Assembly (NCBI GenBank): GCA_963924565.1 | Contig: OZ004615.1 | Coordinates: 16,988,001-17,052,000 of the forward strand | Direction of reading: 5' to 3' | Length of the DNA stretch: 64,000 bases | DNA from: Ascidiella aspersa | Taxonomy: Eukaryota | Shown: positions 6,601-25,000 of the stretch, in pieces | Numbering within the stretch: position 1 is the stretch's first letter | Layout of the letters: each line of letters begins with the position of its first letter | The notes under the pieces: model-generated | Told to the model about the DNA's origin: nothing | Seen by the model: the letters and a program-made list of their open reading frames with translations, nothing else | Databases searched by the model: none | Made by a program: the position numbers and the translations under genes

Positions 6601-9600
6601 TAATAATAGCTTGAGAAGCGCACCGCTTTCGATTTTATTTGCCGCTAGTTGAAAAACGTTGCCGATTGTTTTGAAAGCCTTTCTTGATCGACTTTCCTTT
6701 GCGGCTTATAAGCTCTTTTATGTGTTAGTATATTTCCGTGTTTGATAAACTAAATTGTCAGATATAAAAAGCTGATTTGTCCTAAATTGGTTCTAACGGA
6801 TGCTCCATACACTTTTTGTTTTTATTTGTTTATCTATTTTTTGTTATACATTTATTGACTGGGCTTATATTTCGTTTCATTTAGATGCATTTGCACGAGG
6901 CCCTATGTGGGAAGTGACTGCAATTTTTCCCTCACGCCTTCAACATTTAGTTATATGGATACCTCGAGCTTTGCCCAGTTTCAGGTGAGCTAATAAATAA
7001 TGTAGGGCCTGTTGGGATGATGTGAGAATATTGTATTTCTTTAACATCCTTTTCAAAACAGAAAAAATGCGGGTCATACTTTTGCTATTCAATTATTGTG
7101 TTTGTATTTTAGTAACAACCTCCACGGGGGCTGCTATTGTTGTTACAATGACAAACTTACCTAGAAGGTTTATCGGTATTTCTTGTTATTAAAAAAATGT
7201 CCTATCGTCGTTCAACTTGATTTTGTGTTTTTCAACAATATACTATTTCAGCTCCCTTCTCCCCCTGTTTCGACTTTCCAACTTTCCGCCTTCATCAAAA
7301 CAAGAGAGCCTGACTCTTTTTTTCTCTCCACCACGGATGACGTAACACAGGATCCCAACGCCACGGATTATTACTCGGTTGTGGTGGGCATCGAAGACGG
7401 AAAACCCATGGTCAGTCGATTTTATTTTGTGAAAAATAGTTTCCACATTTGCACCCTACAGTAGCTGCATCAATATCATGGATCGCGAATTAATACTATT
7501 TATTCGAATGTCTTTTCCGTCATATATAGATTAATTTTGCAGTCTGAAAAACCATGTTGAAAAAAGTTTTTGTATTAATCAATTTTAAAAAGCGAAAAGT
7601 CTAAAACCAGACCATAATCTGTTACACTTAGTATACGGTAACTACCCGCCGTTTCAAATTATGAAAAAAATCTATTTGTGGATACAAATATTTATTAAGA
7701 AAGATTAATGTGATATAGTTTCCAATTAGCTAAATGTTTTATCTAGGTTTCACTTGGAGAAGCTGTATTTTACCCTTATTTGCAAGAAAGTGGTGGCGTG
7801 AATACAGAAGGAAAAACGCTATCAGATGGAAAAACTCGTTTTATCTCCATTCATATCGATGATCGTAAAATGTCTTACACAGACGACGAAACGTGGGTGG
7901 AAATATTTGATTTATTTATAATATTGTTTCAGAAAATTTTGTAAAATGTTGTGACCTTTTAATGTGAAAAAAATACACTTTCCTTTTTATTTCGGATAAT
8001 TCTATACCTTTCCCGCGATTACCTTTCATATCTCCAAAAGAAGATTTCTGTTATCTTACTGCTCTCTACTTTTTCCACCAGAACATTTGAGCAAACGTTG
8101 CCCAAAGCTCTCAACATAACAACCTCAACTATTTACGTTGGATTGATGCCCAAGAGACACGGGGGTGAGTGATCTAATGCCTTGAATAGTCATGAAACCT
8201 ACAAGAACGTATATTCCAGTGATTCTAAACAGTGGAGCCTGGGGCGCCTAGTTTTTGTTATTTTTATTTCGGGTGGAGAAAATACAAGCTAACCCCGCTC
8301 TAACATACATCATTTATTTTATGTGATTAGCCATTATGTTTTAAAGCAAATTTCTGCATATCACTAACCTTGTTGGCATTTAAAATGAAGATTGAATTGT
8401 ATTTCTTTGTTTTGTTAATTGCTTCGCTTTATATATCCCTAAAATTTAATAGAATTATAAAAAAGGCAATAAAATTGTACTACGATAAAAAAGGGTGGTG
8501 AATTTGCCCGCGACTAAAATTTCGAAAATCACTGGTGTAAGCGTTACCGTGCAAGTAATTTATTTGGCTTCAGATCTATTATAAATATTTCTCAGGGCCT
8601 TTACTGATGAAACAGTATTATATTTTTTAATATTTTGGGTAAAACAACAGTTTCATACAAGTTTTTCTTTTCAGCCCGCACTCGAAGGTCTTCCTACTCA
8701 TTGCCCCCTTTCAAAGGAGCAATCCAAGATCTTCAGTTCAATGGGTTCAGACTTCTCTTTAGCGGAAAGGAAACCAAGCTAATCGAAGGTAAATTTGAAG
8801 GACATAACTTCCCCAGTTTATAATTCACTTGTTATTTTGTTATTTTATTTTACCCCGAAGACAATGTTTTAAACTTACAGATATGTGCTATTCCGAACGC
8901 ATTGGCCCACGACAGTTAGATTTGTGTGGGTATTTAATTCATGGTGACCAATATTTTGTGTTTCCTTTTTACTTAAGATTCCAAGACACTAACTACTACC
9001 CCGCACAGAAACCACAAAATGTTAGTGATAGAAAAAATCGTAACTTTTTCTCGATATACAAGTATAAGGTTTATGGACATACGTTTTCATAAAGATATAT
9101 TTTGTTATTTAGCTGGCAATTTTCTTTTTAATAGTTTCAAAAATGAAATAATGATTACCATACAGATTCTGGCACTCCCAACTTTATTCTGCCCTTTACT
9201 GCACCAATCGATGTGAAGTTTGGCCTCGTGTCAGACCCGGTATGCAACAAAACCACTCAACCGTGCCAAAACGGAGGGGTTTGTGACGTCACATTCAACG
9301 ATTACGTATGTAATTGCACGCCACAATGGAAAGGAAGGAATTGCAACGACCCGGTGTTTTGCAAGTAAAGAAGAAGTTCATTTAAACGTTTTTTTGTGTG
9401 ATTTGACATTACTAATTTTATGTAATTTAGGAACTGCTGACTTTTAAGAGTTAAAAAATATTGGGAACTGGTTAAATAAAATATGTCTCAACGACATTAC
9501 TTTAATTACACTTTCATTCGCGAATACCATTTACTATTATAATAAAGCGTCTAGGTACGCGATTTATTTTGTTTGCACTAAAAAACATTAAGAATTGATC

Positions 9601-12600
9601 CACTCAATTCAAAACTTTGTTCACTCCCAACTAATGCGGGCCGTTTCCACGCGCACTTTAATTAAAAAATTAAATGTAATGTAACAAATGTTCGAAACTT
9701 AACTTTGCTTATTTTCCCTGTATTTTAGGCAATTGACTTGTCCCGGTGGCATGACTTGCCTAGACTTACCCGCTGGTGGATTCGAATGCCAAGCGCCAAT
9801 AACTATTCAACCTAACACCACCTTCCGCTTCAGCTGGGTAGCGATGGACTCACGAAACTTCACAACTGTGAGCTTCAGAATAAAAACAAGGTTGGTATTG
9901 ACAAGGCATTTGGCTTTTTATTTTATTTTTGTCCACCAATGGTGAACTTAACAAAGCGAAAATAAGAAACAGTAAAGAAATTAGGTAAGGCCTGTGGCTC
10001 GGTTCTTCTCATTGGCCAAGAACGAGGCCGGGAATTTCTGAGCAAGTCAGTAATGGTCTTATCAGAGTCCTCTGAACAACCTGTCTCAACTAGGGAGCAG
10101 GTGCCTCCATGGGGGTAGGGCCCGAGTTAAAACTGCGCAAGGCAGAAGGTAAACATTTTAACCTTTGTTAAGTATTTGGATAAAAGTAAAATAAGGATCT
10201 ACAGGGTACCGTTTATTTCAAAACCTACACAACAAAACTAATCCAAAAATAACCGTGAAGCGGAATTAGTGGTGGCTGCATATGCGTGTAAATTTTGAAA
10301 AAATACTCCTGTGTAATTGTGGCAACGTAAATTTAGCAGAAACAGGGTTGTTTTAAATTAAAGGCATTGATACTTTTAAACGAAAGTATTAAAATAAGAA
10401 TTTACGTCGTCTTGGTCTAATTTCCTTAATTAAATGGCGAGTAGGCAATTCTTTTGCTGTCAAATTATTTTTTCCGTTATCTGCGTGAAACTTTGTTAAA
10501 GTTTTCCAAGTAACAGCATAATCGTCATAGTCAAACAAAGCATAGTGTAAACTGAATATAAAAGGTGGTGAAATTACGTTTTAAAAGGTCTTCCGATCGG
10601 TCCATTTTGCATCTGTCGGACGACAGCAACGTACCACGCGTCGTTTTTCGTCTCGACCTGCACGGTAACCTTGCCATGACGTACGGTAACGTCACCACGT
10701 CGCCACGTCACGCTCTGGTGCCTCGACCAATCAACGATGGCGCTTGGCATGACGTTGAATTGCATCCGATTGATTCCAAGTGAGAATTTATGATGTGGTG
10801 TATGTTTGTTTATTGATTACAATACACAGCACGATTTATTTTAAACCCGGTTTTACCACCATTTTCTGTTTGTTTATAAAGTCATGCCGTCCCGTTTCTT
10901 TCTCGTTAGCCTTTATGAGCTGAACCTTAACCTAAAAAAAGTAACCTAAAGGTCTATTATGTTTTAGCAATAAGCTATCGCTGCCAGGCATAATGTATAA
11001 CCTTAAAAAGTTATGCATCGTTTAAACTTGACGGTGAGCAGATAAACAGGACGCCAACTCCTTCATCTTTTTTATTATTTTTAATCATACAACTGATGAT
11101 TGGCAATTTTGGTAACAACGTTTCCTTCACTTTTTGTTTGTTTTTCAGATATTTTCGTCTCACAGTCGACTCACAATACTCGACGCAAATCGACGCTCCC
11201 GACCGGTTATTGAGTGACGTCATGGCATCCAAAAGCGGTGCTTTGTGGGTTGGAATATCGGCTGAGGAATTGGCGTTTAAAGGTTGGACAGCGTAAAATT
11301 GGTTAGGATATCGAACACATTATAAATACAAAATATATTATTTGCATTGTTTCAACATTTTGTCGTAACTTAAAACTCGCCGATAACACTTAGTTCAGTG
11401 GAACCTTTTATGGCTTGCGGCACCTTGACTGGAATTTTCGTTGAGTATTTTACTGAAATGTCACTATAAATCAAACTGAAAAACACAATCAACTTAAACA
11501 TGTAGGAAAAAGTCATTTGATTTAATGATCTCTAACCGTACACAAATAGTTATAATAGGAAGCTTACCAATTGAGCAAAAAACAGATTCTTATAAATTCG
11601 CAAATACCTAGGCCTATGGGCACCCTTGATCATTAAAAATGGCACACCAGAGTTCCGCGACCCCCGGTTAATAACCACTTACATAGTTGTTGGCTACAGG
11701 AAGAAAAAACATTTTTAGCTTTAAACAACCAAGATTGTTTTCCCATTGCTTTAGGTTGCTTGGTCGATTTGCGAATCGGGGGTTTCCTTCTGCCATTCTA
11801 CGACCCCTACAAGCTGACCAATCACACTGCAGCGATGAGCTCAACGCCTTTCTATATAGTGACGTCACCGCCGCTTATGTTTGGCTGCCACGGCGATGAC
11901 GTGTGCAGGGAGGAGCCGTGTCAAAATAACGGAACATGTGTGGACGAGTTTAACAAATACAGATGCGTGTGTAGAAGAGGTATTTGGATTTGTAGAGTTG
12001 CTTAGTAGGTTGTCATATAAAGTTGCCCTAACAAGCATCTACCTAATCCAAAAAATGCGTATAGACTTTACTTTTAGTTTAAACTAGTTGTGTTTTGTTT
12101 CAGTATATCACTTTTTTCTTTCCAGGTTTCACGTCATCAAATTGTGACGTCAACATCGACAATTGCGTAGGCGTGACATGCTCGGCGAACGGAACTTGTC
12201 TCGATCAAGTGGACGGATTTCGGTGTCGGTGCTTTACCGGTTATCATGGTGAAAAGTAAGATCTATATTAAATTTGTTCATAAAACGTTAAGATACACGC
12301 ATATTTCGATAAGAATATCACTTTTAATAAATATAATGTTCGATGTACATTGCACAATAAATCAGAAAATATCGTAGTAGAAACCAGGGCTGCGGAGTTG
12401 GTTAAAAATAACACGAGTCCGACTCCCGAGAAAAAAATCCTCCATATTCTATTCCATCTTTACAATTTCCAGTTGGCGGCCATGTCAGACTCTAGTAGTT
12501 TTACGTCGTCTTACTCGAGTCCCACATCCGACTCCAGCAAAACAAACCGACTCCTCGAGTCCCGACTCCGACTCCGCAGCCCTGGTAGAAACTGTCAGAT

Positions 12601-15600
12601 GGTATAGAATCCATACCTTAGTAAATTTGGTACTTATGATGAACCTTATGTAAGTTTCACACATCGCAAGAAACCTCGATTACTATTTAATTATTAGCTA
12701 TTTGGCGTACTATCCACTTTGGTGGCTTTGAATTAGGTTATGTACCGGTTTAATGAGTCGATATGAAAAACTGTGTCAACGGAAATGCTACAACAATTTC
12801 CTCTGATTAAATATTACAATATTTCCCAGTTGTGAGTTGGAAACGCTCGAGTGCGCAAGTTCTCCATGCTTGAACAATGCCACGTGCCGCGATCTGGTTG
12901 GTTCGTTTCGCTGCGAGTGTGGCGACGGCCGGTTTGAGGGCGAGCGTTGTCAAATTAACGCGTCACAATCGTGCGGTGGTGACATCACAAATGAAAACCA
13001 TCCATGCGTGAACGGCGGAAGCTGTAGGAATGTCACCGAAGACGAAAAGGTGCGCACCATTTTGCCAATTGTTTTCACCCAAAGCTAAATCTTGTTTACC
13101 AAGAGAATGATCTGTCTTTACACAAAACAGTAAAATTATTTTAAAAATGCAAGTCACTAAACATTGAAAAAAAAACCTATTTTTTTACTCTAGCAAACTA
13201 TATTTTTCTATGCAATGTGTGTTTGTAAAATAATTTTTTTATTGGAACACCTTCTAAATTAGAGAAATTATATTCACGATTTGTTGGCTTTGCATTTATA
13301 AAACGTAAACTTTTTGTTTTCAATATATATATTAACGTTTTTTGCCTTTTAACTTGAATGCATAGTTTACAATTTTGTATAATAAACACTTATCTTATAA
13401 TACATCGCACAACTGGGTGCCCCAAGAGATTCTTAAGTATGCCGAGGGACTTCTTTTTTTATTTATTGAAATAAACTCATTTACACTTCATATGGCAGAT
13501 TTAAAGGCATAGGCTACTGTCGAATTAATAACTGACTGTATTCATTATAACCTATTGCCTTGACGTGTATTAAGCGGTGTTGTCAAGGAATTACACTTTG
13601 TAGAAAGTGTTTCACGATTTTTTTTTCGTGTGTCCCATACTAGTTGAAAACTACTGTAGTGTCCTCTTACACAGCAGTGGTCTCCAACCTGTAGGTCGCG
13701 ACCCCAAGTGGGGTCACCTAAAATTTTGTGGAGTCGCTATAGCTCACTATATTCTTTACAATGACGTCTTACTAATAAACGTTACTGACTGCATCGTCTA
13801 AATTAAATTGCTGTGTTTAGGTCTTAAGAGCTGCTAATTCAAAAAAAAAAGAGCTGCTAATTCAGCTAAAGTGACATTTGACAAAATTAGGTTTCTTTGA
13901 TTTAGCGCAGCGAATGTCGCACTTTCTCAAATTGTTTCATTGCGACATTCGTTCAATAAGTTATAAATGAGCTGTTTTTTTAACACGTCAGCGTTTTGTT
14001 ACTTAACTTTGGCAACGTAGTTTGCAGATATAAGGACTAGGCTTTATGTTCTTAAATATAACAGCGGATACAGTAAAACTCGGTAAAAGTGAAATACTCT
14101 TTCAGCAAATATTTACATGTGGACTTCGATGCAATCACCGTACCCGACTCTGTCAAATTTTATTATTACACCCCATCCCGTTTTTAAACTCATAGTTTGT
14201 GAAGTGGAGTCAGCGCAATGAGCATATTAAAAACGAAACCTCGTAACGCTTGGAAATAGAGCATGACATGCGGTTATGCTTATGCAAAAGGGATGCAAAA
14301 ACTAGTGGATACTAGGCAGGCGCAATAATATTTTTATTTGTAAATGGGTCGCAATGTAAATTCTGATTACATTTTATTTAAATTAGGGTCGCTTATTAAA
14401 AAGGTTTAAGACCACTGCTGCTATACAGTAAGACAAACAAATTAAACATACATATAGTTTTTTACATTTATTTTTTTTTTGTAACATTTATAACATAAAC
14501 AGCAAAAAGTCAACAATTTACTAATTAAACGTTCTACTGTTTTCTTCAGATCACGTTTGCGTGCGAGTGCCCTCGTATGTACACCGGTTCAAGGTGCGAG
14601 TCAGCAATTGACCCGTGCGAGGACTCGGTCTGTGTGAATAATTCCACCTGTGTGGCAAACTTGGTAAGTTGGGAAAAAAAAATTAGTTAAAGCTTTGCGT
14701 TGTTTCAAGCTGGAAACAGAAACAAATTCCTGGTTAACAAACGTTTACATCTGTCACGTCAAAACTAAATCTCAATAATATTTTTTTGGTATACATTTAC
14801 AATTACATCGTCTAAATTTTAAAACGTCAATCAGTAGTTCCTAAACTATGTGCCTTGATAGATTTTTCGAGTGTGGCACGAATTTTTTGTCATTTGACAA
14901 CTCACATGAATGTGGTATTCACGTTTACCTTGTTTAGTAGGGGTAAATGAGAAAGTTTGTTTTGTTAAAAGTGTTTTTCTTAGCTGTGAAATGACAAAGT
15001 TGGATAATCACCAGTCTAAAAATACAAGTACTTGTAACGTTTTTCCTCCAAAAAATATTTTTCAAGTTACAATAATTACGCTCCTTACATCTTATGGTAA
15101 ATACACGAGTCACCTAAGCATTTTGCGCTCCATATATAGTTATTCATCTGTCGGGTGATTTTGTTTTGCGGCAGACTTCGGCGACGTTCACCTGCGCATG
15201 CGAAGAAGGTTACACGGGCGCGACGTGTCAGCACGTGATTGGTCGATGCACGAGCGCGCCGTGTCAGAACGGCGGAAGTTGCGTAGACGGAAAAAGTGGC
15301 TTCCGGTGTCTCTGCCCGAAAAGTGAGTATCTGTTGACTGAAAAAATGTGCACGACAAAATGGTCTTAAAGAGTTCTTTGCATATGCAAAATTTCCTGTC
15401 GGAAAAAAACTCATTTGTCGTGTTCTTCTGTTAGTCAAACGTATTGTACCTTTCATAGATCATAGATACACTAAAACCATCCATAGAAACACAAATCTTG
15501 TACCATTAATAGAAACAGAAATACACACATATAGAACTGTTACTGTCACTTCGTACTTGCCATTCATACAGCAACATCTGTTAAAAGGATACATATGTGT

Positions 15601-18600
15601 TTTTGGTGGTTTTATTAAAACAATTCCCATGTGATGCAGCTCTGCAAAACTATCCAGCGGTTAACTTAAAAAACATTGTAAAGACAATAAAAATCTAAAC
15701 TATAGCGGTAATAAAATATATTATCTCTAAATATAAGAAAAAAAAAATATTTTCACATGCTAAATATAGAATTTTAATAGGAAAACCCAGTAAGACGAAC
15801 TAGTCCTAATAGGTTTCCTACGTGTCTAGTGAAGCTTTGTTCACATTTCAATTTCAGGTTACACCGGTTTCACGTGTAACCTGCTCAACAATTGCACTCG
15901 TCCAGGCAACACCACGATGTGCGAAAATGACGGCGAATGTTTGGTGAATTTGGACAAGCGAGGGACGCCAATGTACACCTGCAATTGTACGCGTCTATAC
16001 GCAGGTGCGACACTATGCGGTTCGGCAAAAGCCTATTGGTATCCGTTGAGTGGCGCACGAGTTCAACGCAATGGTTTTATAATTGAATGTAAACCAAATG
16101 AACTTAGCTTGTATGACTGTTTACTTATAAACTGGACCGTTTATTATGATGTGTATGCATTATATACTATACAATTAGTTCAGCCCTTTTAAAGTTATAC
16201 ATACAAACGATAATGACTGCCTTACAATAGGACTAATTCATTTCAGTATTCCTTATTCAAGATACCTGGTGTATTATTTACATTGTGTATTCGATAAATC
16301 GTACATTTTGTTTAAATGTTAAAAACTGCAAATTTCAATTTATCTTGTGTATCACAGTGTGAACGCATAAACAAGACAAATATTTGCTCGCAAAACTATG
16401 CAAGTAATATTCCTTTCCTTAGAATTGCCGGAGGCCAAAATAGTTTCACGTACGCAAGCGTCGAAGTTAGACAGAAATGCAAGTCAGGATGACGCGCGGG
16501 AATTCCCCGCCATGCATTATGTAACACGTCTCTTATCTCGCCTCAGTTATATGCCTCCCGGTATGCTGACTGTCAAATTTCTACCTTCCTCGTTTATGTC
16601 AAGTCATACTACTGCCGACATGATAAGATTTAATCCTTAAGAAAAAAGGTGCCGTGTTACATAATGCGGTGACTCTTTCGCCGTTTCGCGTGTGCGAACT
16701 TCTACGATTTCTTGATTAAGTTTTTGTTGTCAAATGCGCGCTCTATCCGGCACGTTTTTGCATTTCAGGAAACTCCTGCCAGTTTGCCAATCCTTGCTTG
16801 AACGCCACTTGCCACAATGGCGGCACTTGTGTCGTCACCGACAGCATTGTGACGTCACAGCTGGATGCTGTGTCATCGTTGTGCCAATGCACGGAAGGAT
16901 TTTCTGGACCCGATTGTTCAGAGGTAGATTGTCGTATTGTCGTATGCACCATGTTCAGACAATCTATATTTAATAAAAATATAGATTAAATTTTACTCGC
17001 TTTTAGTTAAAATACAGTAGTAGTGTCTGGATTTTATTTTATTTAACTTTCTTGAGCATAATTAAACACACAAATCACCAAAATGCTCATCGCAGATTAC
17101 TTCATCATTTACGTATGGAAACCCTTGGCTTATCATTGGTCCCTTGATTGGCGCAGTCGCCTTATTGCTCACGATAGGAATTGTTACGTCATTGGTTTGT
17201 TACGTAAGAGGGGCGAGAGCGAACCGGGGGGTATACAGTCCCCAGCAGACTGAAAGTATTGTCGTGCCCTCCCTCAAAACCCCGTTGCCTCCGAAACAAC
17301 CCCCGGAAAGACTCATCTGAGTGGTTAGTCGTGCATGACGTGGTGATGTGACGTCATGTTCTGTTGTGACGTAACGCAGTAAGTTCCGACGTCACCACAC
17401 GAACACTGTATAATAGCTCGGTGAATTGTTACGTTATTGCACGACGAGGTGACGTGACGTATAGCGTGGTGAATTCTGACGTCACTTGGTGTTGTTGTAA
17501 GCATGACGTGGTGACGTAGTTCGTTGTTGTGGTTTCGATTTTGAGTGAAGAAACTTTTGGCATAATTTATGTATAAAGTTTTGAAGGTGGTCCAGCAGCA
17601 CGACTGATGTAAAAAACCTTTTATGATCTCGGATCACATATTAGGCATGCCACAATCGTTAGATGTTTTATTTTAATTGTTCGACACCGTGTAAAAAAAC
17701 ATAGTGCTGGAATGAGTAGTACACAGCGTCGAATCATAATCGGTACGAAAGTTTTACACGAAAGCACAAACTTGTCAGTTGAATACTGAAAAGTCCTATT
17801 AGCCACTTGTTGTCATGAGTACATAATAAAACTATGATAATTAGTCGATTAGTGTTTCCATTAAGTCGGCCTACATTACCGAGAGGTAAAGACAAATATA
17901 TTTCACTGAAGTGGGCGGTTCAACCTGTATTGTCCAATATTACAGTCAATGACAAGAAGCACGTAAAGGGTAAACATTCTCAATTTCACTTTGTAGGCAT
18001 AACTAAAATTGGTCACCCTTCTTAAACCTGGATATGTGTATTTTTACATTTTCTCTAACTGCCTTAACCCAGTGGTGGTATTTGGAACATTAAGAACAGG
18101 TTCTCCCCTACTAACCGTTTGAGATTGCTTTACAATGCTTTACACCAACAAAAATGTCTACAAAATTTTTGAATCGTTTGGCCATAACCGACTTCTATTA
18201 ATGCATGTAAACTCCCGCAAAGATTCTCCGGAGCGCTGTATTTTTATTAAATGGAGAAAAACTCCTGATACCCGATATCTGAAAATTTTAAACAGGAGTT
18301 TCTGGTAATATATGGAGCAGAGCCTATACTGGTGCCAAGTGTGGTATCGGTACTAGCAATACACCTTGCTTGATCTAATATCAAACGCAATTTCTTTCCT
18401 AAATAAAGCTTTCTTAAGGAATAATGAAAAAAATTAATTTAACAAACCTTCGTTACACTAAAGCAAATATTCGCCAAATTACGTAAAAAGATAACATTCA
18501 AAGGTTTTGTTGTTTTAATTTTGCCTATTTGATCATGATAATGACATAATTGGGTGGTTTTCAACATCACGGTATTAATGCGGCCGTATTTTCCGAAAAA

Positions 18601-19121
18601 CTGCGCACTCCTAAGTTTCATTAAGACAACCTCAACGGCCAACCAAAAATCTTTCCTTGGTCAAACAGAGCACTACAACTGACGCTTAAATTTGTAAATG
18701 TCCGATACTTCGCAATATATTCCGATACCCGATGCTTAAGACAAGAAGTACCTTCTTAATTCGAAAACCGTTTGAAGATCGCACCAAAATCTCAAAAAAA
18801 TCGCGTACTAAAACCTCCTTTTGACAATTCCAAAATCTTTTCCTGAACGTTTACCACTTTCTCGTCCTACAGACTTCCGGGCTGCTCTCCTCCACTTCCA
18901 TGGTGATCCTGATCGCTGCGGTCGGCGGCGCCGGCATCCTTCTCCTCGTGGTCCTGGGGGTGTTCGCGGGCGTCTCGGCCGCCATGGACCGCCGCTCGAC
19001 CTCCGGCACCTACTCGCCCAGCAAGCAGGAGGCCACTTCGGTTCCACCGGGCCTTTCCGGCCTCGAGTCGGAAATGTGGACCGAGCTGAAGCCGCCGCCC
19101 AAGTGCGAGCGGCTCATTTGA
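635..19121 (+). CDS. crb: Crumbs family apical polarity protein, 5'-truncated by the window (EGF repeats - LamG1 - EGF - LamG2 - EGF - LamG3 - 8 EGF - TM - short tail)
   Basis: 25 shared GT-AG exons with continuous phase: 635-835, 1359-1494, 1997-2108, 2567-2742, 3470-3614, 4065-4283, 4881-5092, 5573-5801, 6296-6485, 6885-6984, 7252-7410, 7747-7892, 8082-8164, 8675-8788, 9166-9364, 9729-9890, 10588-10779, 11149-11282, 11755-11979, 12126-12255, 12830-13049, 14550-14663, 15175-15322, 15858-16004, 16769-16923 (4048 nt). These join to either 17096-17320 or 18873-19121. Protein evidence: Ca-binding EGFs (IDEC..PC.N), the Crumbs-specific long-loop EGF CIERSDQSSYGVHFNATFSYETAHGFVCIC, LamG motifs (FRTTL, NDDTWH, GCIRDV, FKGAIQDL, NDGAWH, FKGCLVDLRIGG), and tails with GxYSP..E and ERLI. 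Confidence 0.97.
3981..4053 (+). repeat. about 40-bp tandem duplication just upstream of a Crumbs acceptor
   Basis: gttggttttgttattgtgc.tattttttt occurs twice. Confidence 0.7.
8217..8534. mobile_element. degenerate hAT-type MITE
   Basis: Ends CAGTGATTCT / AAAATCACTG; TSD not convincing. Confidence 0.45.
11396..11680. mobile_element. degenerate copy of MITE family 1
   Basis: Shares long blocks with 46927-47221 (gactggaattttcgttgagtattt, tgtcactataaa, accaattgagcaaaaa, ggcacccttga, cacaccag). Confidence 0.8.
12385..12584. mobile_element. hAT-type MITE
   Basis: TIR CAGGGCTGCGGAGT...ACTCCGCAGCCCTG, subterminal CGACTC repeats, perfect 8-bp TSD GTAGAAAC on both sides. Confidence 0.9.
13675..14417. 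mobile_element. hAT-type non-autonomous element
   Basis: Ends CAGTGGTCTCCAACCT / AGGTTTAAGACCACTG with GGGTCGC subterminal repeats; TSD degenerate. Confidence 0.7.
16514..16667. repeat. inverted repeat / fold-back (probably a MITE core)
   Basis: Perfect 15-bp arms GCATTATGTAACACG (16514-16528) and CGTGTTACATAATGC (16653-16667), with further partial pairing inside (tcttatc/gataaga). Confidence 0.7.
17096..17320 (+). CDS. crb: Crumbs alternative terminal exon A (TM + 37-aa tail)
   Basis: Acceptor ctcatcgcag, phase 0, matching the donor after 16923. Encodes ITSSFTYGNPWLIIGPLIGAVALLLTIGIVTSLVCYV-RGARANRGVYSPQQTESIVVPSLKTPLPPKQPPERLI* with no internal stop. Absent from the ORF track because it has no start codon. 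Confidence 0.9.
   Translation: MTSSFTYGNPWLIIGPLIGAVALLLTIGIVTSLVCYVRGARANRGVYSPQQTESIVVPSLKTPLPPKQPPERLI
17336..17518. promoter_or_regulatory. dense (T)GACGT / CRE-like motif cluster immediately after the exon A stop
   Basis: About 9 GACGT cores in about 185 nt, including perfect TGACGTCA at 17349 and 17477. Function is inferred only. Confidence 0.5.
17825..17830 (+). terminator. candidate poly(A) signal for Crumbs isoform A
   Basis: AATAAA about 500 nt after the exon A stop and upstream of the exon B acceptor. The AT-rich background makes this weak evidence. Confidence 0.35.
18873..19121 (+). CDS. crb: Crumbs alternative terminal exon B (TM + about 45-aa tail)
   Basis: Strong acceptor ccactttctcgtcctacag, phase 0. 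Encodes TSGLLSSTSMVILIAAVGGAGILLLVVLGVFAGVSAA-MDRRSTSGTYSPSKQEATSVPPGLSGLESEMWTELKPPPKCERLI*, with canonical GTYSPS..E, EMW..PPP and ERLI. Confidence 0.93.
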   Translation, partial: TSGLLSSTSMVILIAAVGGAGILLLVVLGVFAGVSAAMDRRSTSGTYSPSKQEATSVPPGLSGLESEMWTELKPPPKCERLI

Positions 19122-19281
19122 CGTCATTTTTTTCAGTGACGTCATTTTTTCTGTAGTTGAATTTCGAGTTTGCGGTGTCGGTCGGTTTTCTGCTGCACTT
19201 GGCTCCGGACAAATGATTTTAAGCGATGGCTTCGATCTGTGTAGATTTGTAAATGACAAGGTTAAAATATAACCTATTCGG

Positions 19282-19410
19282 CAACAAATATAAAATCCAA
19301 TTTTAGTCTGAAGGACAACAATTATAAAATCCCATTTTAATCTAAGAGACAACAAATACGAAATTCTATTTTAAACTGAAGGACAACAATTATAAAATCC
19401 TATTTTATTC
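19282..19410 (+). repeat. about 33-34-bp minisatellite (about 4 units) in the exon B 3' UTR
   Basis: Repeated taaaatcc.atttta.tctgaaggacaacaa units. Confidence 0.75.
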
Positions 19411-20105
19411 TAACTGAAGAAAAGCTTGGCTTCCATTTTATTGTTGTTTTTTTATAAACTAGTTCTGAACAAAAGGTCAACTTTTAAAAACATGACTTCT
19501 TGATCTTTGGACCCATTAGTTGTGGCGCTATTGTTATTTGGACACATTGCGCACAACAAAACATACTCTTTGCTACGTTCCCTCGTCGCCGTACTTTTAC
19601 GAAACTGTGCTTTTAAACTTTTATTTCGTTCTTGCTGTTCGAGAGCTGCTTTCTGCCTTTACACAGACTGATTTACCGATTGTGATGACTCACTTCTTCG
19701 TTGATATACGCGACCAGCTTTTATATTTGTACTTTTGTAGCGTGACATATAGTGTTCGTTTTATTCTTCAACTGTGTTTAAAACCTTTATTTCGAATATT
19801 TTTATTTTATTTGCGTCGTGCAATTAAATGCCAAGTGTGGTTTGACACCGCGATGTATATTTGCCAAATAGCGTTTCTTTAAAAACTGACCTTATAAAAA
19901 ATGTTTAATGTAACTTTTTGGTATTTAAAGATCCGAAATCTACCTGGTAACTGTATAATAGTACTGCAATACTGAATAGTGTTCACAACTGTCAATCAGC
20001 TATAAAATTTATACCTGAATAGTATTTCTTGTGGTGCATTTTGCTCTTATAGTGCTTTTTACCTGAAAATTGTTGCTGTGTATTTTTTAAATCTAAGTGA
20101 ACGGT

Positions 20106-20111
20106 AATAAA
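20106..20111 (+). terminator. candidate poly(A) signal for Crumbs isoform B
   Basis: AATAAA about 1 kb after the exon B stop; an ATTAAA also lies near 19823. Confidence 0.3.
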
Positions 20112-22041
20112 AACAAGTTTTACAATATCCAGAATCGACGGTTAATCCGTTAGAGGAGACGAATACAATATCTATCAACATTCCCCTTCCCCTGCGTACA
20201 ACGATTATCTCAAGACTCAAATAAGTTCGTTTCAAAAGACAAATATATAGCCGACTGAAAAATACTGGAAAACCCCGTTACTTACGCGTAAATGCTTTGT
20301 TTACGCAGGCACTATTGCTACATACGCAATGCTCTTCAATCGGCTATACGGTATACCCAAGTGTATACAAATATAGGGTATACAACTAAACAGCCTAACT
20401 AATTATTAGTGCCTGTCACAACTGTGACAGAATCTTTTTTCATAAAAAAAAAACTTATTTTTTAGGTCGAAAAATAATCGCCCGAATAATAACCTATGTA
20501 ATCCGTTTACTGAGCACTACACCGGGAGCCTTCAATAGATTGTACGAATCAGTTGACCAATTAAAGATCTGCATGCAAGAAAGGCCAGGCTAAAAATGTT
20601 AGCGGTGAGGTTGAAACTTGCGATCTCCGCCATACCATACGGATCCAGGAGGGCAAACATGTCACGCTTCTCGTAAATCTTTCATGTATACTTATATGTA
20701 CCACGAATTGAGGAAACCTTTTTATCCAAAGGACTGTGTGTGCAATGTCGCTGTCTAATATTTTTTAGATTTCGCGAGAATCTGGATGTTGTATCGTAAT
20801 TACCGCTTTTATAAATTCAAAGTTTATGAAAAAAGACATTATATGATTTTTGCGCCTGAACAAACTTATGTTTTTTTTTGGGCTGTCGGCTAGGTGAAAC
20901 ACAGCTTGTTTTTCATCGATCTATTTGTAACTAAATAAAACTTTTAAAAATTGTAACTTAATAAACTCAAATTTTCTTTACGGTTGTTTTTTCTGAAATG
21001 CAGACATACAAATATTGAATATATGAAAAAAGAAGCACTGTTTTTTGTTTATGAGGGTAAAATGGAAAATGATAAGCAATTAAACTATTTTAAATGATTT
21101 TAATTACCCAAACCAACTTTTGTTTTTGTCTGGTTTCTGTAAACTGATCTCAAAAAACAGCGGTTCTGTATAACGGTTAATTTTACCCGTCAGGTGTCAC
21201 TGTTGGAGCATTTTTGTAAACAGGGGATTTCCAAAAAATCGTGTTTACGAAATCTTGGCTTGAACTGAACCTTTCTCGTGATCATAAAGGCGTCACATGT
21301 TCGGCCTAACTTTTAGTCGTGTTAGAAATGGCAGACGTGCTGCTGCAGCCGCCAGTAGTTTACTACATCTAACATGTCTTATACTTAGTCCTATGGCTGT
21401 CATTTAAGATGTTCGGCAGTACATTTTATAGGAACATATGAGATGTTATATGTACTAAATAATTGGCTTAATGAGATGTATTATGTCAAGATTTTGTCAA
21501 ATTGTGAGACTAAACATAGAAGTTTGGTGGTGTCTCTGAAACTTGTACCAATACGTGATTATTTAATGATTTGGGTTAGGGTTTGGGCGGTGGCCAGTTT
21601 GGTGCATTCTGTTCCCAAAGCGAAGCAAGAAGCTCGAAATTTTATGGTGCAATATCGCGTAAACAGGATATCAATAATAAATTTTACATATTATTAAAAG
21701 CAACCTAACTTAGCCATCAAATCTGACTTAAAAAAAATTCAAGAAGGGCCATGACTCGACCTCCAGTTAATCGGATATAGGTTATTAATATTCGTTAAAA
21801 AATTCATAAATATCCAAAATTTCAAATTGGTCTAAAAAGCAAAGGGATATGTCGCATTAACTAATGTGTGGAAATCTTGAAGTCTTGTATATTTCTTGAG
21901 TTATGGGACTTTTATGCTGATGTTTTTTTGCTTATCTATGTAGACATATTAATTAAAATTGTTTTCAATGCATTACAGCGTATTTGCACACCTATGATGT
22001 ACTTAAATTGCTTAATGCCAGTTCTGTAAACAATATCAATA

Positions 22042-25000
22042 ATGGGGGTGAAATATTCCATTCCAGATGTTGAAGGCCATTCATTTGAAATGGTCTACAG
22101 TAAGTTTTTCCTCATTATTTCTAGTACCATGTTCTGCTTAATCATGGTAAATTAATAGTTTTAATGGTTAACTGTGTTTGAGATAATGTAATTGAAAAAT
22201 TGTTTGATTCAGTTAGGATTTCTTTAAAATGTTACATCAATCTTTTCATTGTAAAATCCTGGTGAGAAAATAGCGAGCTCAAAAGTTGTTCACCTATTTT
22301 TTGTACTTACCAGCATTTGCACTTTATATTTATTTTTTTAATTATAAAATAGGAATATTATGGTTTAGACATGTTTGTAATTATCACAATAATAGAAGTA
22401 TTATACACAGTCAAGACTTAGTAATAGTTTGTACTATTCAAGTTGGGTCCATAATACACTAATTAAGCTTTCAAACTAAACATTTTTTTACCCTTTCTGT
22501 GAGTTGTGGTTTACATACTGTGGAACATTACTGTAAAAACGGCAAGCCTCTAATAAATATTTATCACCCCAGACAATGTCTTGACAAACGTACTGCGCTT
22601 CTCTAAGTACTACAAGGCATCCTACATGTGGTTCTACCTCCAGAAGCTAAAGCTGGAAATGGAAGGCAAAGAACCTACCCAAAAGTGGCAACTTGCTCAG
22701 AGAAAGGTAGTTAACTTTAGTTTAACAGGTTATCACTTGAACAGAATATTCCAGAGGGCAGTTAATAGCATTGACATAAAAAAATATCGTAATTAGAAAA
22801 TTATAAATGTAATTGACCATCGCTGTTAGACAAAAAAAAACAGTTTATTTAATTCTTTCACTTAATTTAATATTGTTTTGTTTATCCGAGAAGATTTTGA
22901 TTCAATGTAACAGATTAATGTATCGTTGCTTGATTATGAATTGTATTGCTTTTTTGCAAAATGTTACAGTGGGAAAGCTATAACCGTCCACTCAAAGAAG
23001 GTGTGCTTTATGTACTGGCTGATGCCACTGGGAAAAAGTGGAAGAAGAGATACTGTGTAATGCAATCTAACTATGCTATGGAGGTCTACAACTCTAAAGA
23101 AGTAGGCACCATAGTAATATTATTTTGGACATACTGCTGGATAGGAAATGGTTTTTCATTGTCATTTTAAAATACCTCTATAATTAACTGAATCTTGCTT
23201 TTGCTGATTCAATATAACATATTGAGTCGAAATAGATTTTAGCACATCTTAACATTCTTTTAATGTTATAATTTAATTTTGTAAACATCAAATTTTATAG
23301 TGTAGGTTAGCAGTTTAAGATTTGAAATACCAATTTTGTTAGATGTATCTTTTTTATCATGTTTGTGATTGAATTTATAATACAAACCAATAAAACATAA
23401 AATCAGTAATTTATTATGTAAATCTTTATTTCTTAATTAATGGTTGTACCATCTCACCACTATGATTATCAGTAAGTGAAGTGGCCATAGTGACCAACAG
23501 TTTTACTAATGTTCGCTGACAACTATGTTTGTTTAACACGGGCCTTTTTGTTGTGAGAAAAAATAAACGATTCACTTTTCCAGACGTTACATGTCTCTAG
23601 ATTTTAAAAGATTCACAGCTACTGTAGATTTTTTTAAGGAAATCTAATAAGTTTTAATTTACACCCATGAACATTAATAATTTGGCCCTACCTAAATTAC
23701 TTTATATTCACATTCAGTGTAGTCGTACTAGTTTCTCAACAATTCAAGTATTGTTGAAAACATGTTTTGGGAATCTAAAAATGTTGATGCTCAACTTTAA
23801 TTTCATTAAGGAATATGAAAATGCTGGAAAAGCAAGAATGTCAAACAAATACAGTGGCCATGATGTTGTAACAAATGTGAATTCCTATCTCAGAAACAAA
23901 CTGGAAATTGCATCACGTGACTTTGGTAAACCTTTGTATAGCATAAGGTTTTATTGTTTTTCATTTTGGTCTGTTGCCGTTTTCATAATAAAATGATTGT
24001 CATGTTAAAAAATTATTGTTTCATAAATTTTCCCAAAATTTCAGGTTACATCAACCATGACATTTCTGCATTTATAAAGAAGGTAACTTTGATTGGCCAA
24101 AGTGGAAAACGACCAACACAGCACATTTTCTGTGTTGGACATGACTGGCGAGGCATCACTTATTTTGCTGCTGAAACTGCTATTGAGAAGGATCATTGGG
24201 TTCGGATCCTTAAGGACAGTGTTCGTCATTTAGAAGGTATGTGAAAACAGCTAATTGTGGGACTTTTTGTTTTTTTCAAATAATAGGTCTCCTCTCGCTT
24301 CTTAGCTTGCTTGTCAAAGAAAGCACAGATTAATAAAAACATGGTTTTAAGTAAAGCTAACAAAATTAAATTATAAATAAAATAACAAAATATTGTGTAC
24401 AAAAACATGAAAGTTTCTGTTTTATTAGAAGTAATTTGCATAAAACTTTATTAACTTGTGTTTTTATGCTTCCAACCATTTAATATTTAAGTATACCAAA
24501 TGCTATGCTAATAATGTTGGTTTTTGACTGTTTAAACTCTTAACCAAATTATAAAAAACATTATAAATATCAGTTACAACAAACATTATAAGCAATGCAG
24601 GTTTATCTGGATTTTAAATTTATTGACAAAGTTGAGGCACATGAGACTTCGGTTCGGCTGTTTATGCTTGAAACTAATATAAAATATATCCCAGCCACAG
24701 AGTATTTATTTCATCAATTAATTTTAACATCTCTTGTAACTCAAAAAAGTTTTGCCAAGTATGTGTCAATATTTACTGTGTTGGATATTCACCACCGTCA
24801 TAACCGTAATGCAAACAAGTATGGAATTGTTTGTTGTTGGTAATTTATCTTACTAGGAAATGAATTGAATCACTTACAAATAGTTGGTGTATTACAGTTT
24901 AATACTGTGACAAGATGTAATATATAAAATATTTATTTTAACTTGCAATCATTTAACAAGAGGTCAAATCAGATGTATAGGATAAATTTAATAGCAAAAA

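What the first reader, a model, noticed from the sequence alone, without database searches (positions are those of the whole stretch)
17207..17320. Tail A looks like a natural phospho-resistant Crumbs tail; tail B keeps the aPKC sites
Seen: tail A, RGARANRGVYSPQQTE...PPERLI, is 37 aa from the first Arg. It aligns without gaps to the 37-aa Drosophila tail RNKRATRGTYSPSAQE...ERLI (recalled). It keeps G8, Y10, P12 and E16 (FERM-binding determinants) but has N6, V9 and Q13 in place of T6, T9 and S13. Tail B, MDRRSTSGTYSPSKQE, keeps T6, T9, S11 and S13 and adds S5 and S7. Established: T6/T9/S11/S13 are the reported aPKC target residues, and phosphorylation there has been reported to weaken Moesin FERM binding; its in vivo importance in flies is debated. 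Inference: splicing toggles between a kinase-regulated tail and a constitutively FERM-competent tail.
Basis: partly seen in the sequence, partly recalled or inferred. Interest (0 to 1): 0.8.

Follow-up and report, generated by a model that had tools for sequence, protein, structure and literature searches.

The report
Crumbs gene with two alternative tails
This animal's Crumbs polarity gene can make two versions of its membrane anchor and short inner tail, one of which lacks the two threonines that a polarity kinase targets in flies, but the only relative found for that tail keeps them, so the loss looks like a species quirk and not the purpose of the switch.

Summary
Tail A (17207-17317, stop 17318-17320) is 37 aa with N6, V9, S11, Q13. 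Tail B (18984-19118) is 45 aa with T6, T9, S11, S13 plus S5 and S7. Both match the fly Crumbs tail in PDB 4wsi/4yl8.

RNA-derived contigs support both forms. One joins the last EGF exon directly to exon B. Another runs through exon A and then splices from 17323 onto exon B. So A looks like a 228-nt cassette exon whose stop lies 3 nt before its donor, not a second terminal exon. The EGF-to-A joint was not seen.

The "kinase-resistant versus kinase-regulated" reading is only partly supported. In flies only T6 and T9 are aPKC sites in vitro, so tail A lacks both by homology. But the single A-type orthologue found (P0003) has T6, T7 and T9. Three of five B-type relatives lack T6 or T9. Four of 39 distinct tails lack S/T at both positions.

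The conserved A/B differences lie elsewhere: the TM helix, Q13 versus S/N13, linker length, and the residues before ERLI.

This scan had already noted the exon pair, on this same window (s1-801583). I found no description of it in print. I class it as a new variant of a known kind, of moderate interest.

The parts
16769..16923 (+). Last shared extracellular (EGF) exon of the Crumbs gene. It ends in phase 0 (..GPDCSE) with donor GAG|GTAGAT.
   Evidence: X3 spliced contig record 9 joins 16001/4>16766/9 and 16921/3>18871/3. Pfam EGF 23.5 bits against a cutoff of 21.5 on the ORF 16798-16986. Sequence read.
17096..17323 (+). Exon A, a 228-nt cassette exon. It encodes an extracellular stub, TM helix A (about 17126-17206), the 37-aa tail A (17207-17317) and stop TGA (17318-17320). 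Donor GTG|GTTAGT follows 17323. The acceptor has a weak, A-rich tract.
   Evidence: Translation. X3 contig record 10 covers 17101-17322 and then continues on 18872/3 (22 nt, GT..AG). There is no RNA depth in 16924-17100 (table 2). Splice sites read. The EGF>A joint itself was not observed.
17207..17320 (+). It has N6, R7, G8, V9, Y10, S11, P12, Q13, E16 and ends PPERLI.
17336..17517 (.). Dense cluster of TGACGT/ACGTCA words in the intron just after exon A's donor. Twelve word starts fall in kb 17, against 94 in the whole 64 kb. The stretch is single copy in the genome. Its role is unknown.
   Evidence: No excess RNA structure (z -0.14).
18873..19121 (+). Exon B coding part. It encodes an extracellular stub, TM helix B (about 18900-18983), the 45-aa tail B (18984-19118) and stop TGA (19119-19121). 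The acceptor has a strong pyrimidine tract. This is the most GC-rich 200 bp of the window (0.70; GC3 0.88).
   Evidence: X3 contig record 9 splices the EGF exon directly to it. It is the best tblastn match to the C-terminus of Crumbs-like P0015.
19122..20125 (+). 3'UTR after exon B, presumably shared by both mRNA forms. AATAAA lies at 20106.
   Evidence: X3 contig record 14 covers 18996-20022. X5 RNA raw reads cover 19122-20178, all with the first mate on the - strand. The poly(A) signal scan is. The exact 3' end is inferred.

Best explanation
The 3' end of this animal's Crumbs gene carries two diverged copies of the 'TM helix + cytoplasmic tail' exon.

Exon B (18873-) is the constitutive terminal exon, with a strong acceptor and the gene's 3'UTR. 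Exon A (17096-17323) is an optional cassette with a weak acceptor and a moderate donor. When A is skipped, the last EGF exon joins B and the protein ends with TM-B and tail B. When A is included, translation ends at A's own stop, 3 nt before the A>B joint, so the protein ends with TM-A and tail A, and exon B becomes 3'UTR. With the stop this close to the last joint, the usual 50-55-nt rule does not predict nonsense-mediated decay (inferred).

Both isoforms share the ectodomain. Both keep the FERM-binding core (G8, Y10, S11, P12, E16) and the ERLI PDZ ligand, so both should assemble Crumbs complexes.

In this species tail A lacks the two fly aPKC sites (T6, T9) and keeps R7, while tail B has the sites but S7. 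These states are not conserved in relatives of either exon type. The features that separate the two types in every relative found are: the TM helix sequence (..TSLVCY in A), Q13 (A) versus S or N at 13 (B), tail length (36-37 aa against 40-52 aa with a long Gly/Ser/Pro linker), and the residues just before ERLI (PPERLI against K/R/P-C-ERLI or P-I-ERLI).

I therefore infer that the switch tunes membrane-proximal behaviour and partner preference (FERM and PDZ partners, trafficking). A dedicated on/off switch for aPKC control seems less likely.

Shown: the sequences, the EGF>B joint, the A>B joint, and the orthologue states. Inferred: the EGF>A joint, NMD immunity, and all protein function.
For: - Splicing. 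X3 record 9 (612 nt, depth 8.6) joins EGF>B. X3 record 10 (244 nt, depth 3.4) covers exon A and joins 17323>18873 with GT..AG. There is no intronic depth upstream of 17101.
- Splice-site quality and exon length: 228 nt = 76 codons, phase 0 on both sides.
- A-type orthologue P0003: same ..TSLVCY.RG.R...G.YSPQ..ES..PPK.PPERLI frame, but T6, T7, T9. It is the reciprocal best partner of tail A (score 109, next about 60).
- B-type relatives P0001, P0002, P0004, P0007, P0010, with variable positions 6, 9 and 13.
- Only synonymous differences were seen in other samples: 17239 T>C in A; 18995 C>T and 19118 T>A in B (my codon reading).
- S11 and E16 are invariant in 39 of 39 distinct tails.
- Fly aPKC sites are T6 and T9 only. 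R7 and Y10 are needed to recruit Moesin.
Against: - The A>B joint rests on one low-depth contig with a 22-nt overhang. The EGF>A joint was not observed.
- The one RNA run laid as raw reads (X5, about 6% of it read) gave only 22 reads, none on exon A or on the coding part of exon B.
- Run X3's type is not on record. I call it RNA because its contigs skip GT..AG introns.
So 'N6 and V9 are not conserved' rests on n=1.
- In this species the phospho-site contrast is real, and it could matter locally even if it is not ancestral.
- No binding, kinase or expression data exist.
Confidence: 0.6

Rival explanations
1. Splicing toggles Crumbs between an aPKC-regulated tail (B) and a constitutively FERM-competent, aPKC-resistant tail (A), and this is the selected function of the exon pair.
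For: - Tail A has N6 and V9 where the fly tail has its only in-vitro aPKC sites.
- Tail A keeps R7, G8 and Y10.
- Tail B has T6 and T9 plus S5 and S7.
- aPKC phosphorylation is proposed to antagonise Moesin binding (PMC7090908 passage; the title of Wei 2015 was seen only in reference lists).
- Both mRNA forms are supported.
Against: - A-type orthologue P0003 has T6, T7 and T9.
- Three of five B-type relatives lack T at 6 or 9. One of them (P0010) lacks S/T at 6, 9 and 13.
- V9, A9 and H9 occur in ordinary single-tail Crumbs proteins, for example P0011, P0018, P0020, P0022, P0024 and P0026.
- Tail B lacks R7, which fly work found to be needed for Moesin recruitment. So B may bind Moesin poorly whether or not it is phosphorylated.
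- Fly non-phosphorylatable knock-ins are normal.
Confidence: 0.2
2. Exon A is a decaying or noisy duplicate. Its inclusion is splicing noise, and only the B isoform is functional.
For: - Weak acceptor and moderate donor.
- Lower contig depth than the EGF>B form (3.4 against 8.6).
- No X5 reads on it.
- No homologue found in two word-based searches apart from P0003.
Against: - The frame is intact and has every Crumbs tail hallmark plus a stop.
- An orthologue at 54-59% identity keeps the TM helix, the FBM core, PPERLI and the terminal position. This argues for long-term purifying selection.
- The only polymorphism seen in the exon is synonymous.
Confidence: 0.12
3. Tail B belongs to a separate small CRB3-like gene downstream of Crumbs, not to Crumbs itself.
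For: - The ORF 18900-19121 starts with ATG.
- The genome does have a CRB3-like small ORF elsewhere, at C8:4626759-4626974.
Against: - An RNA-derived contig joins two Crumbs EGF exons to 18873 at a GT..AG intron.
- That ORF has no signal peptide or ectodomain.
- Exon B is the best match to the C-terminus of a full-length Crumbs-like protein.
Confidence: 0.03

Closest known systems
Drosophila Crumbs cytoplasmic tail (37 aa; PDB 4wsi and 4yl8)
   Same: Tail A has the same length. Both window tails have the same FBM core (G8, Y10, S11, P12, E16) and the same ERLI end. Tail A also shares R1, R4, A5 and R7.
   Different: The fly gene has one tail, with T6, T9 and S13 and the RxKR ER-export motif. 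Tail A has N6, V9, Q13 and RGAR. Tail B has MDRR, S7 and is 8 aa longer than the 37-aa fly tail. Fly crb splicing variants found in my searches affect the extracellular part (listings and abstracts of PMC5312091 and PMC4674277).
Vertebrate CRB1-A and CRB1-B isoforms
   Same: One Crumbs-family gene uses alternative 3' exons, each encoding its own TM and intracellular domain, on a shared ectodomain (Ray 2020, PMC7335077, passages read).
   Different: CRB1-B's intracellular domain lacks the conserved FERM and PDZ motifs and is paired with its own promoter. Here both tails keep FBM and ERLI, and the choice appears to be cassette inclusion.
Mammalian CRB3 ERLI and CLPI splice forms
   Same: Alternative splicing changes the C-terminal tail of a Crumbs-family protein (PMC2064851, abstract in the listing).
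   Different: The CLPI form loses the ERLI PDZ ligand and the TM is shared. Here both TM and tail are exchanged, and both forms end in ERLI.
Integrin alpha6 A and B cytoplasmic variants
   Same: Two splice variants have different cytoplasmic domains (PMC2132821, abstract in the listing). From recall, not checked here: the A tail comes from a stop-bearing cassette exon, and when that exon is included the B-coding exon becomes 3'UTR. That is the mechanism proposed here.
   Different: It is an unrelated protein family, and its TM is not exchanged.
C. elegans CRB-1 and the CRB3-like small proteins
   Same: These are natural Crumbs-family tails without the fly phospho-acceptor residues. Sotillos 2004 notes their absence from C. 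elegans Crb-1. This genome's own CRB3-like ORF and P0021 both have F6 and K9.
   Different: Those are separate genes, not alternative exons of one gene.

Membership tests
Crumbs (CRB) family | Large ectodomain of EGF-like and laminin-G repeats encoded upstream on the same strand | tested here: met
   Pfam EGF hits on three exon ORFs, including the last one before the tails. A 1999-aa Crumbs-like protein (P0015) aligns colinearly from 636 to 19118. Laminin-G was not detected by Pfam on the two short exon ORFs tried.
Crumbs (CRB) family | Single TM helix followed by a short (about 37 aa) cytoplasmic tail | tested here: met
   Both exons have a 26-29-residue hydrophobic run followed by a tail of 37 aa (A) or 45 aa (B). 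The TM assignment is by eye; no predictor was run.
Crumbs (CRB) family | FERM-binding motif core G8-x-Y10-S11-P12 ... E16 | tested here: met
   Present in both tails. S11 and E16 are invariant in 39 of 39 distinct tails. G8, Y10 and P12 are invariant by construction, because they served as the anchor motif.
Crumbs (CRB) family | C-terminal PDZ ligand ERLI | tested here: met
   Both tails end ERLI followed by TGA.
aPKC-regulated Crumbs tail (fly type) | Thr at positions 6 and 9, the in-vitro aPKC sites | tested here: not met
   Tail A has N6 and V9, so the feature is not met. Tail B has T6 and T9, so it is met. Whether B is actually phosphorylated cannot be tested with these tools.
aPKC-resistant tail as a conserved A-exon property | A-type orthologues lack S/T at positions 6 and 9 | tested here: not met
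   P0003, the only A-type orthologue found, has T6, T7 and T9. Q13 is shared. n=1.
Di-basic RxKR ER-export motif of Crumbs | R-x-K-R at tail positions 1-4 | tested here: not met
   A has R-G-A-R and B has M-D-R-R, against the fly RNKR (motif from PMC6681134, abstract and passages). The functional consequence was not tested.
Stop-bearing cassette exon (alternative C-terminus) | RNA showing both skipping (upstream>B) and inclusion (upstream>A and A>B) | tested here: inconclusive
   EGF>B and A>B joints were seen in X3 contigs. The EGF>A joint was not seen. The A contig starts 5 nt inside the predicted exon and there is no intronic depth upstream of it.

The most novel reading that the evidence does not exclude
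The two-tail exon pair is old rather than a local duplication. The evidence is as follows.
- A vertebrate-like metagenome contig (L007) also carries two tandem phase-0 TM+tail exons, both ending ERLI.
- The second L007 tail has the ..EMW..K.PP.ERLI pattern.
- Outside their own group, the B-type tails score best against tails of that kind: P0014, then L007's second tail.

If the window's animal is a tunicate, as another agent's unchecked note suggests, the chordate ancestor's Crumbs gene may already have had two alternative tails. The two tail types now found on separate vertebrate genes would then descend from them.
Probability: 0.12. Interest if true: 0.75.

Novelty: new variant of a known kind. 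Interest (0 to 1): 0.45.

Why it matters
Crumbs tails are among the most studied short signalling peptides in cell polarity. The in vivo role of their aPKC sites is disputed.

A gene that naturally offers two complete TM+tail modules on one ectodomain is a ready-made comparison. Both modules have intact FERM and PDZ motifs, but they differ at positions 6, 7, 9 and 13, in the linker, and in the TM helix. The pair can be used to ask which tail features set partner choice, trafficking and regulation.

It also matters for annotation. Depending on which isoform is modelled, the tail-B coding exon may be labelled as 3'UTR, or exon A may be missed.

The stronger claim, a conserved kinase-resistant isoform, is not borne out by the relatives found so far.

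Tried and rejected
- Word-based protein search with exon A found nothing. With exon B it found only P0001. With an A+P0003 profile it found only P0003. That tool sees only proteins of 0.55-1.75 times the query length, so full-length Crumbs proteins were out of reach.
The contigs carrying P0001 and P0003 could not be read, so I could not test whether A-type and B-type exons sit together in those species.
- The metagenome scan was seeded with B-type patterns. It returned 13 loci. Twelve have a single tail exon, and I call them insect-like only because they resemble the fly tail. One (L007) has two.
- RNA folding of exon B plus its trailing palindromes (z -1.47) and of the TGACGT cluster (z -0.14) showed nothing special.
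- The TGACGT cluster is single copy, not a repeat family.
- Pfam gives no family for either tail exon, and no laminin-G hit on the two short exon ORFs tried.
- Papers. Wei 2015 (PMC4416843) and Sherrard and Fehon 2015 (PMC4440922) are not held. What I say of them comes from citing papers. Cao 2017 was seen only through citing papers.
- My statement that two ERLI-ended alternative tails are not described in print rests only. Supplements were not consulted.
- I did not build or search a joined (spliced) protein model. Exons were searched one by one, and the joined step was left out.
Full report
**What is in the sequence**

The window's + strand carries the distal two-thirds of a Crumbs-type gene. 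Many exon-sized ORFs have EGF cysteine patterns. Three of them score as Pfam EGF, including the last one before the tails. A 1999-aa Crumbs-like protein returned by the protein search (P0015) aligns colinearly from 636 to 19118.

The last shared exon ends at 16923 in phase 0 (..GPDCSE|gtagat). Two exons follow, and each starts in phase 0 after an AG.

- Exon A (from 17096) encodes ITSSFTYGNPW, a hydrophobic helix, and the 37-aa tail at 17207-17317. Its stop is at 17318-17320.
- Exon B (from 18873) encodes TSGLLSSTS, a second and unrelated-looking hydrophobic helix, and a 45-aa tail at 18984-19118. Its stop is at 19119-19121.
- The two exon translations are 31% identical.

PDB chains 4wsi_X and 4yl8 ('Protein crumbs') align to tail A (E 0.23) and to tail B (E 0.012). 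From those alignments:

- Tail A has R1, R4, A5, N6, R7, G8, V9, Y10, S11, P12, Q13, T15, E16.
- Tail B has R3, R4, S5, T6, S7, G8, T9, Y10, S11, P12, S13, Q15, E16.

Tail B is 45 aa, not 37.

**Is it really alternative splicing?**

One run search and one read-laying run were available. Run X3 has no recorded type. Its contigs skip GT..AG introns and cover exons and UTR almost exclusively, so I treat it as RNA-derived.

- Record 9 (612 nt, depth 8.6) joins an upstream EGF exon to 16769-16923 and then directly to 18873. This is the tail-B mRNA. It rules out the idea that tail B belongs to a separate small gene.
- Record 10 (244 nt, depth 3.4) covers 17101-17322 and then continues for 22 nt on 18872/3. 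Shifted by one base, the skipped piece runs from GT (17324) to AG (18872).
- Exon A is therefore not a terminal exon in that molecule. It is a 228-nt (76-codon) cassette spliced onto exon B, with its own stop 3 nt before the joint.
- The bin depths show no RNA between 16924 and 17100. This argues against intron retention and fits an exon start at or near 17096. The EGF>A joint itself was not seen.
- The acceptor of A lies in an A-rich tract and its donor is GTG|GTTAGT. The acceptor of B has a long pyrimidine tract. That is the usual pattern for a regulated cassette ahead of a constitutive exon.
- The RNA run laid as raw reads (X5, about 6% read) gave only 22 reads. All lie between 18518 and 20178, with the first mate on the - strand. 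They support a + strand 3'UTR after exon B and nothing more.
- Differences in other samples are all at third codon positions and synonymous by my reading: 17239 in A, and 18995 and 19118 in B.

**Relatives**

A profile of the two exons, searched against 1.84 billion representative proteins, gave 34 hits at E<=1e-3. Of these, 32 carry a Crumbs-type tail.

- One hit, P0003 (71 aa, from an ENA contig of 20,951 bp), is clearly of the A type. It is 54% or 59% identical to exon A.
- P0003 shares W..GP..GAV..TSLVCY.RG.R, G.YSPQ..ES and PPK.PPERLI with exon A. It is tail A's reciprocal best partner (score 109, next about 60).
- Its tail reads T6, T7, T9, S11, Q13.
- Five hits are of the B type. They share an acidic residue plus RR at the membrane, S or T at position 7, a long linker, and ..ELKPPP.CERLI or ..KPPRPPIERLI. 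This grouping is my judgement and the shared motifs.

| B-type relative | Position 6 | Position 7 | Position 9 | Position 13 |
|---|---|---|---|---|
| P0001 | N | T | T | S |
| P0004 | T | S | A | S |
| P0002 | T | S | T | S |
| P0007 | T | S | T | S |
| P0010 | Q | S | E | N |

So the single A-type relative has both threonines, and three of five B-type relatives lack one or both.

I also tabulated all 39 distinct tails (49 rows in total). These are the two window tails, the paralogue, 14 tails from 13 metagenome loci, and 32 proteins.

| Position | Residue counts among 39 distinct tails |
|---|---|
| 6 | T 28, S 3, N 3, F 2, L 2, Q 1 |
| 9 | T 27, V 4, A 3, K 2, S 1, E 1, H 1 |
| 13 | S 34, Q 4, N 1 |
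| 11 | S 39 |
| 16 | E 39 |

- Four of the 39 lack S/T at both 6 and 9: tail A, P0010, and the two CRB3-like tails.
- G8, Y10 and P12 are invariant by construction, because I anchored on them.
- Four returned proteins were dropped before the count. P0005 and P0006 are not Crumbs tails. P0028 and P0036 have a tail followed by a read-through of the stop.
- The panel is biased towards what an A+B profile and B-type DNA patterns can find.

**The same genome has a third ERLI tail**

A search of the window's own genome (308.6 Mb, 75 contigs) with each exon found one further locus, C8:4626759-4626974. It holds a 92-aa ORF with a Ser/Thr-rich stub, a TM helix, and a tail with F6 and K9 ending PPPPERLI. 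This is a CRB3-like small protein. P0021 is its close relative from another source. Tails without the fly phospho-acceptors are therefore not unusual, even within this genome.

**What the literature says (what I saw)**

- Sotillos 2004 (PMC2172211, passages). T6, T9, S11 and S13 are the conserved Ser/Thr residues. Add-back experiments identified T6 and T9 as the aPKC substrates. T6A T9A is not phosphorylated. The quadruple mutant still binds aPKC, Patj and Moesin. The paper also notes that C. elegans Crb-1 lacks these residues.
- PMC4718732 (passages). Moesin recruitment fails on Y10A or R7A, and direct binding is lost on Y10A.
- PMC10249358 (passages). In 4YL8 the Crumbs tail binds the F3b site and the F1/F3 cleft, and the glycine two residues before the tyrosine packs on Moesin F250.
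- PMC7090908 and PMC6020718 (passages). aPKC phosphorylation 'may antagonize Moe binding', but non-phosphorylatable knock-ins are viable and normal (Cao 2017, not seen directly).
- PMC6681134 (abstract and passages). The RNKR (RxKR) motif at the start of the tail aids ER export. Neither window tail has RxKR.
- Ray 2020 (PMC7335077, passages). CRB1-A and CRB1-B use different 3' exons, each encoding a TM and an intracellular domain, but CRB1-B lacks the conserved motifs.
- Three searches for alternative ERLI-ended Crumbs tails, including ascidian terms, returned nothing relevant.

**Reading**

The exon pair is real and old enough to have recognisable relatives of each type. The mechanism best supported by the RNA is inclusion or skipping of a stop-bearing cassette. 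This gives two Crumbs isoforms with the same ectodomain but different TM helices and tails, both competent in principle for FERM and PDZ binding.

In this species tail A would, by homology with fly data, escape aPKC at positions 6 and 9 while keeping R7. Tail B has the sites but lacks R7. The relatives show that these particular states drift in both exon types. What stays different is the TM helix, position 13, the linker length, and the residues before ERLI.

I therefore rank 'partner, trafficking or membrane tuning by exchanging the whole TM+tail module' above 'aPKC toggle'. The latter could still hold locally.

**Limits**

- There is one A-type orthologue, with no genomic context.
- One low-depth contig supports the A>B joint, and there is none for EGF>A.
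- There are no expression patterns and no biochemistry.
- The organism is coded. Another agent's note calls it 'probably sea-squirt', which I did not test.
- I did not build a joined protein model; the exons were searched separately.

Noticed in passing
window 18901-19100 (exon B): Exon B is the most GC-rich 200 bp of the 64-kb window: 0.70 against a mean of 0.369 (sd 0.071). Its GC3 is 0.88 against 0.51 for exon A. There is no CpG depletion and no excess RNA structure. Unexplained.
   Followed up: partly
window 17336-17517 and 19119-19144; whole window: The palindrome TGACGTCA occurs 20 times in the window against 0.68 expected (0 of 100 shuffles reach 20). TGACGT words cluster just after exon A's donor. 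Two full palindromes sit directly on and after exon B's stop codon. Some copies are coding (Cys-Asp-Val-Asn of EGF repeats). Other notes of this scan report the same excess genome-wide.
   Followed up: partly
G000:C8:4626759-4626974 (-) = L002 1495-1773 (-): A 92-aa ORF encodes a CRB3-like small protein: a Ser/Thr-rich stub, a TM helix, and a tail with F6 and K9 ending PPPPERLI. A close relative (P0021) exists in a JGI sample.
   Followed up: partly
L007 9057-9284 and 10230-10447: A vertebrate-like metagenome contig (Ga0181612_150531, 11 kb) has two tandem phase-0 TM+tail exons, both ending ERLI plus a stop. Both keep S/T6, T9, S11 and S13. No donor follows the first stop. The other 12 loci of the scan show one tail exon each. 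Organism unknown; I did not take it for human.
   Followed up: partly
window 18698-18733: This is a short stretch where the DNA run X1 has extra contigs and several loose ends, and where X3 depth jumps. It is probably a small dispersed repeat in the A-B intron.
   Followed up: no
window about 22946-24244 (+): ORFs with pleckstrin-homology-like sequence mark the start of the next gene downstream. Not examined.
   Followed up: no
P0028, P0036: Two database proteins continue past ERLI with a W. I take this to mean the TGA stop was read as Trp by the gene caller, so these are metagenome gene calls on animal DNA made with the wrong genetic code.
   Followed up: no
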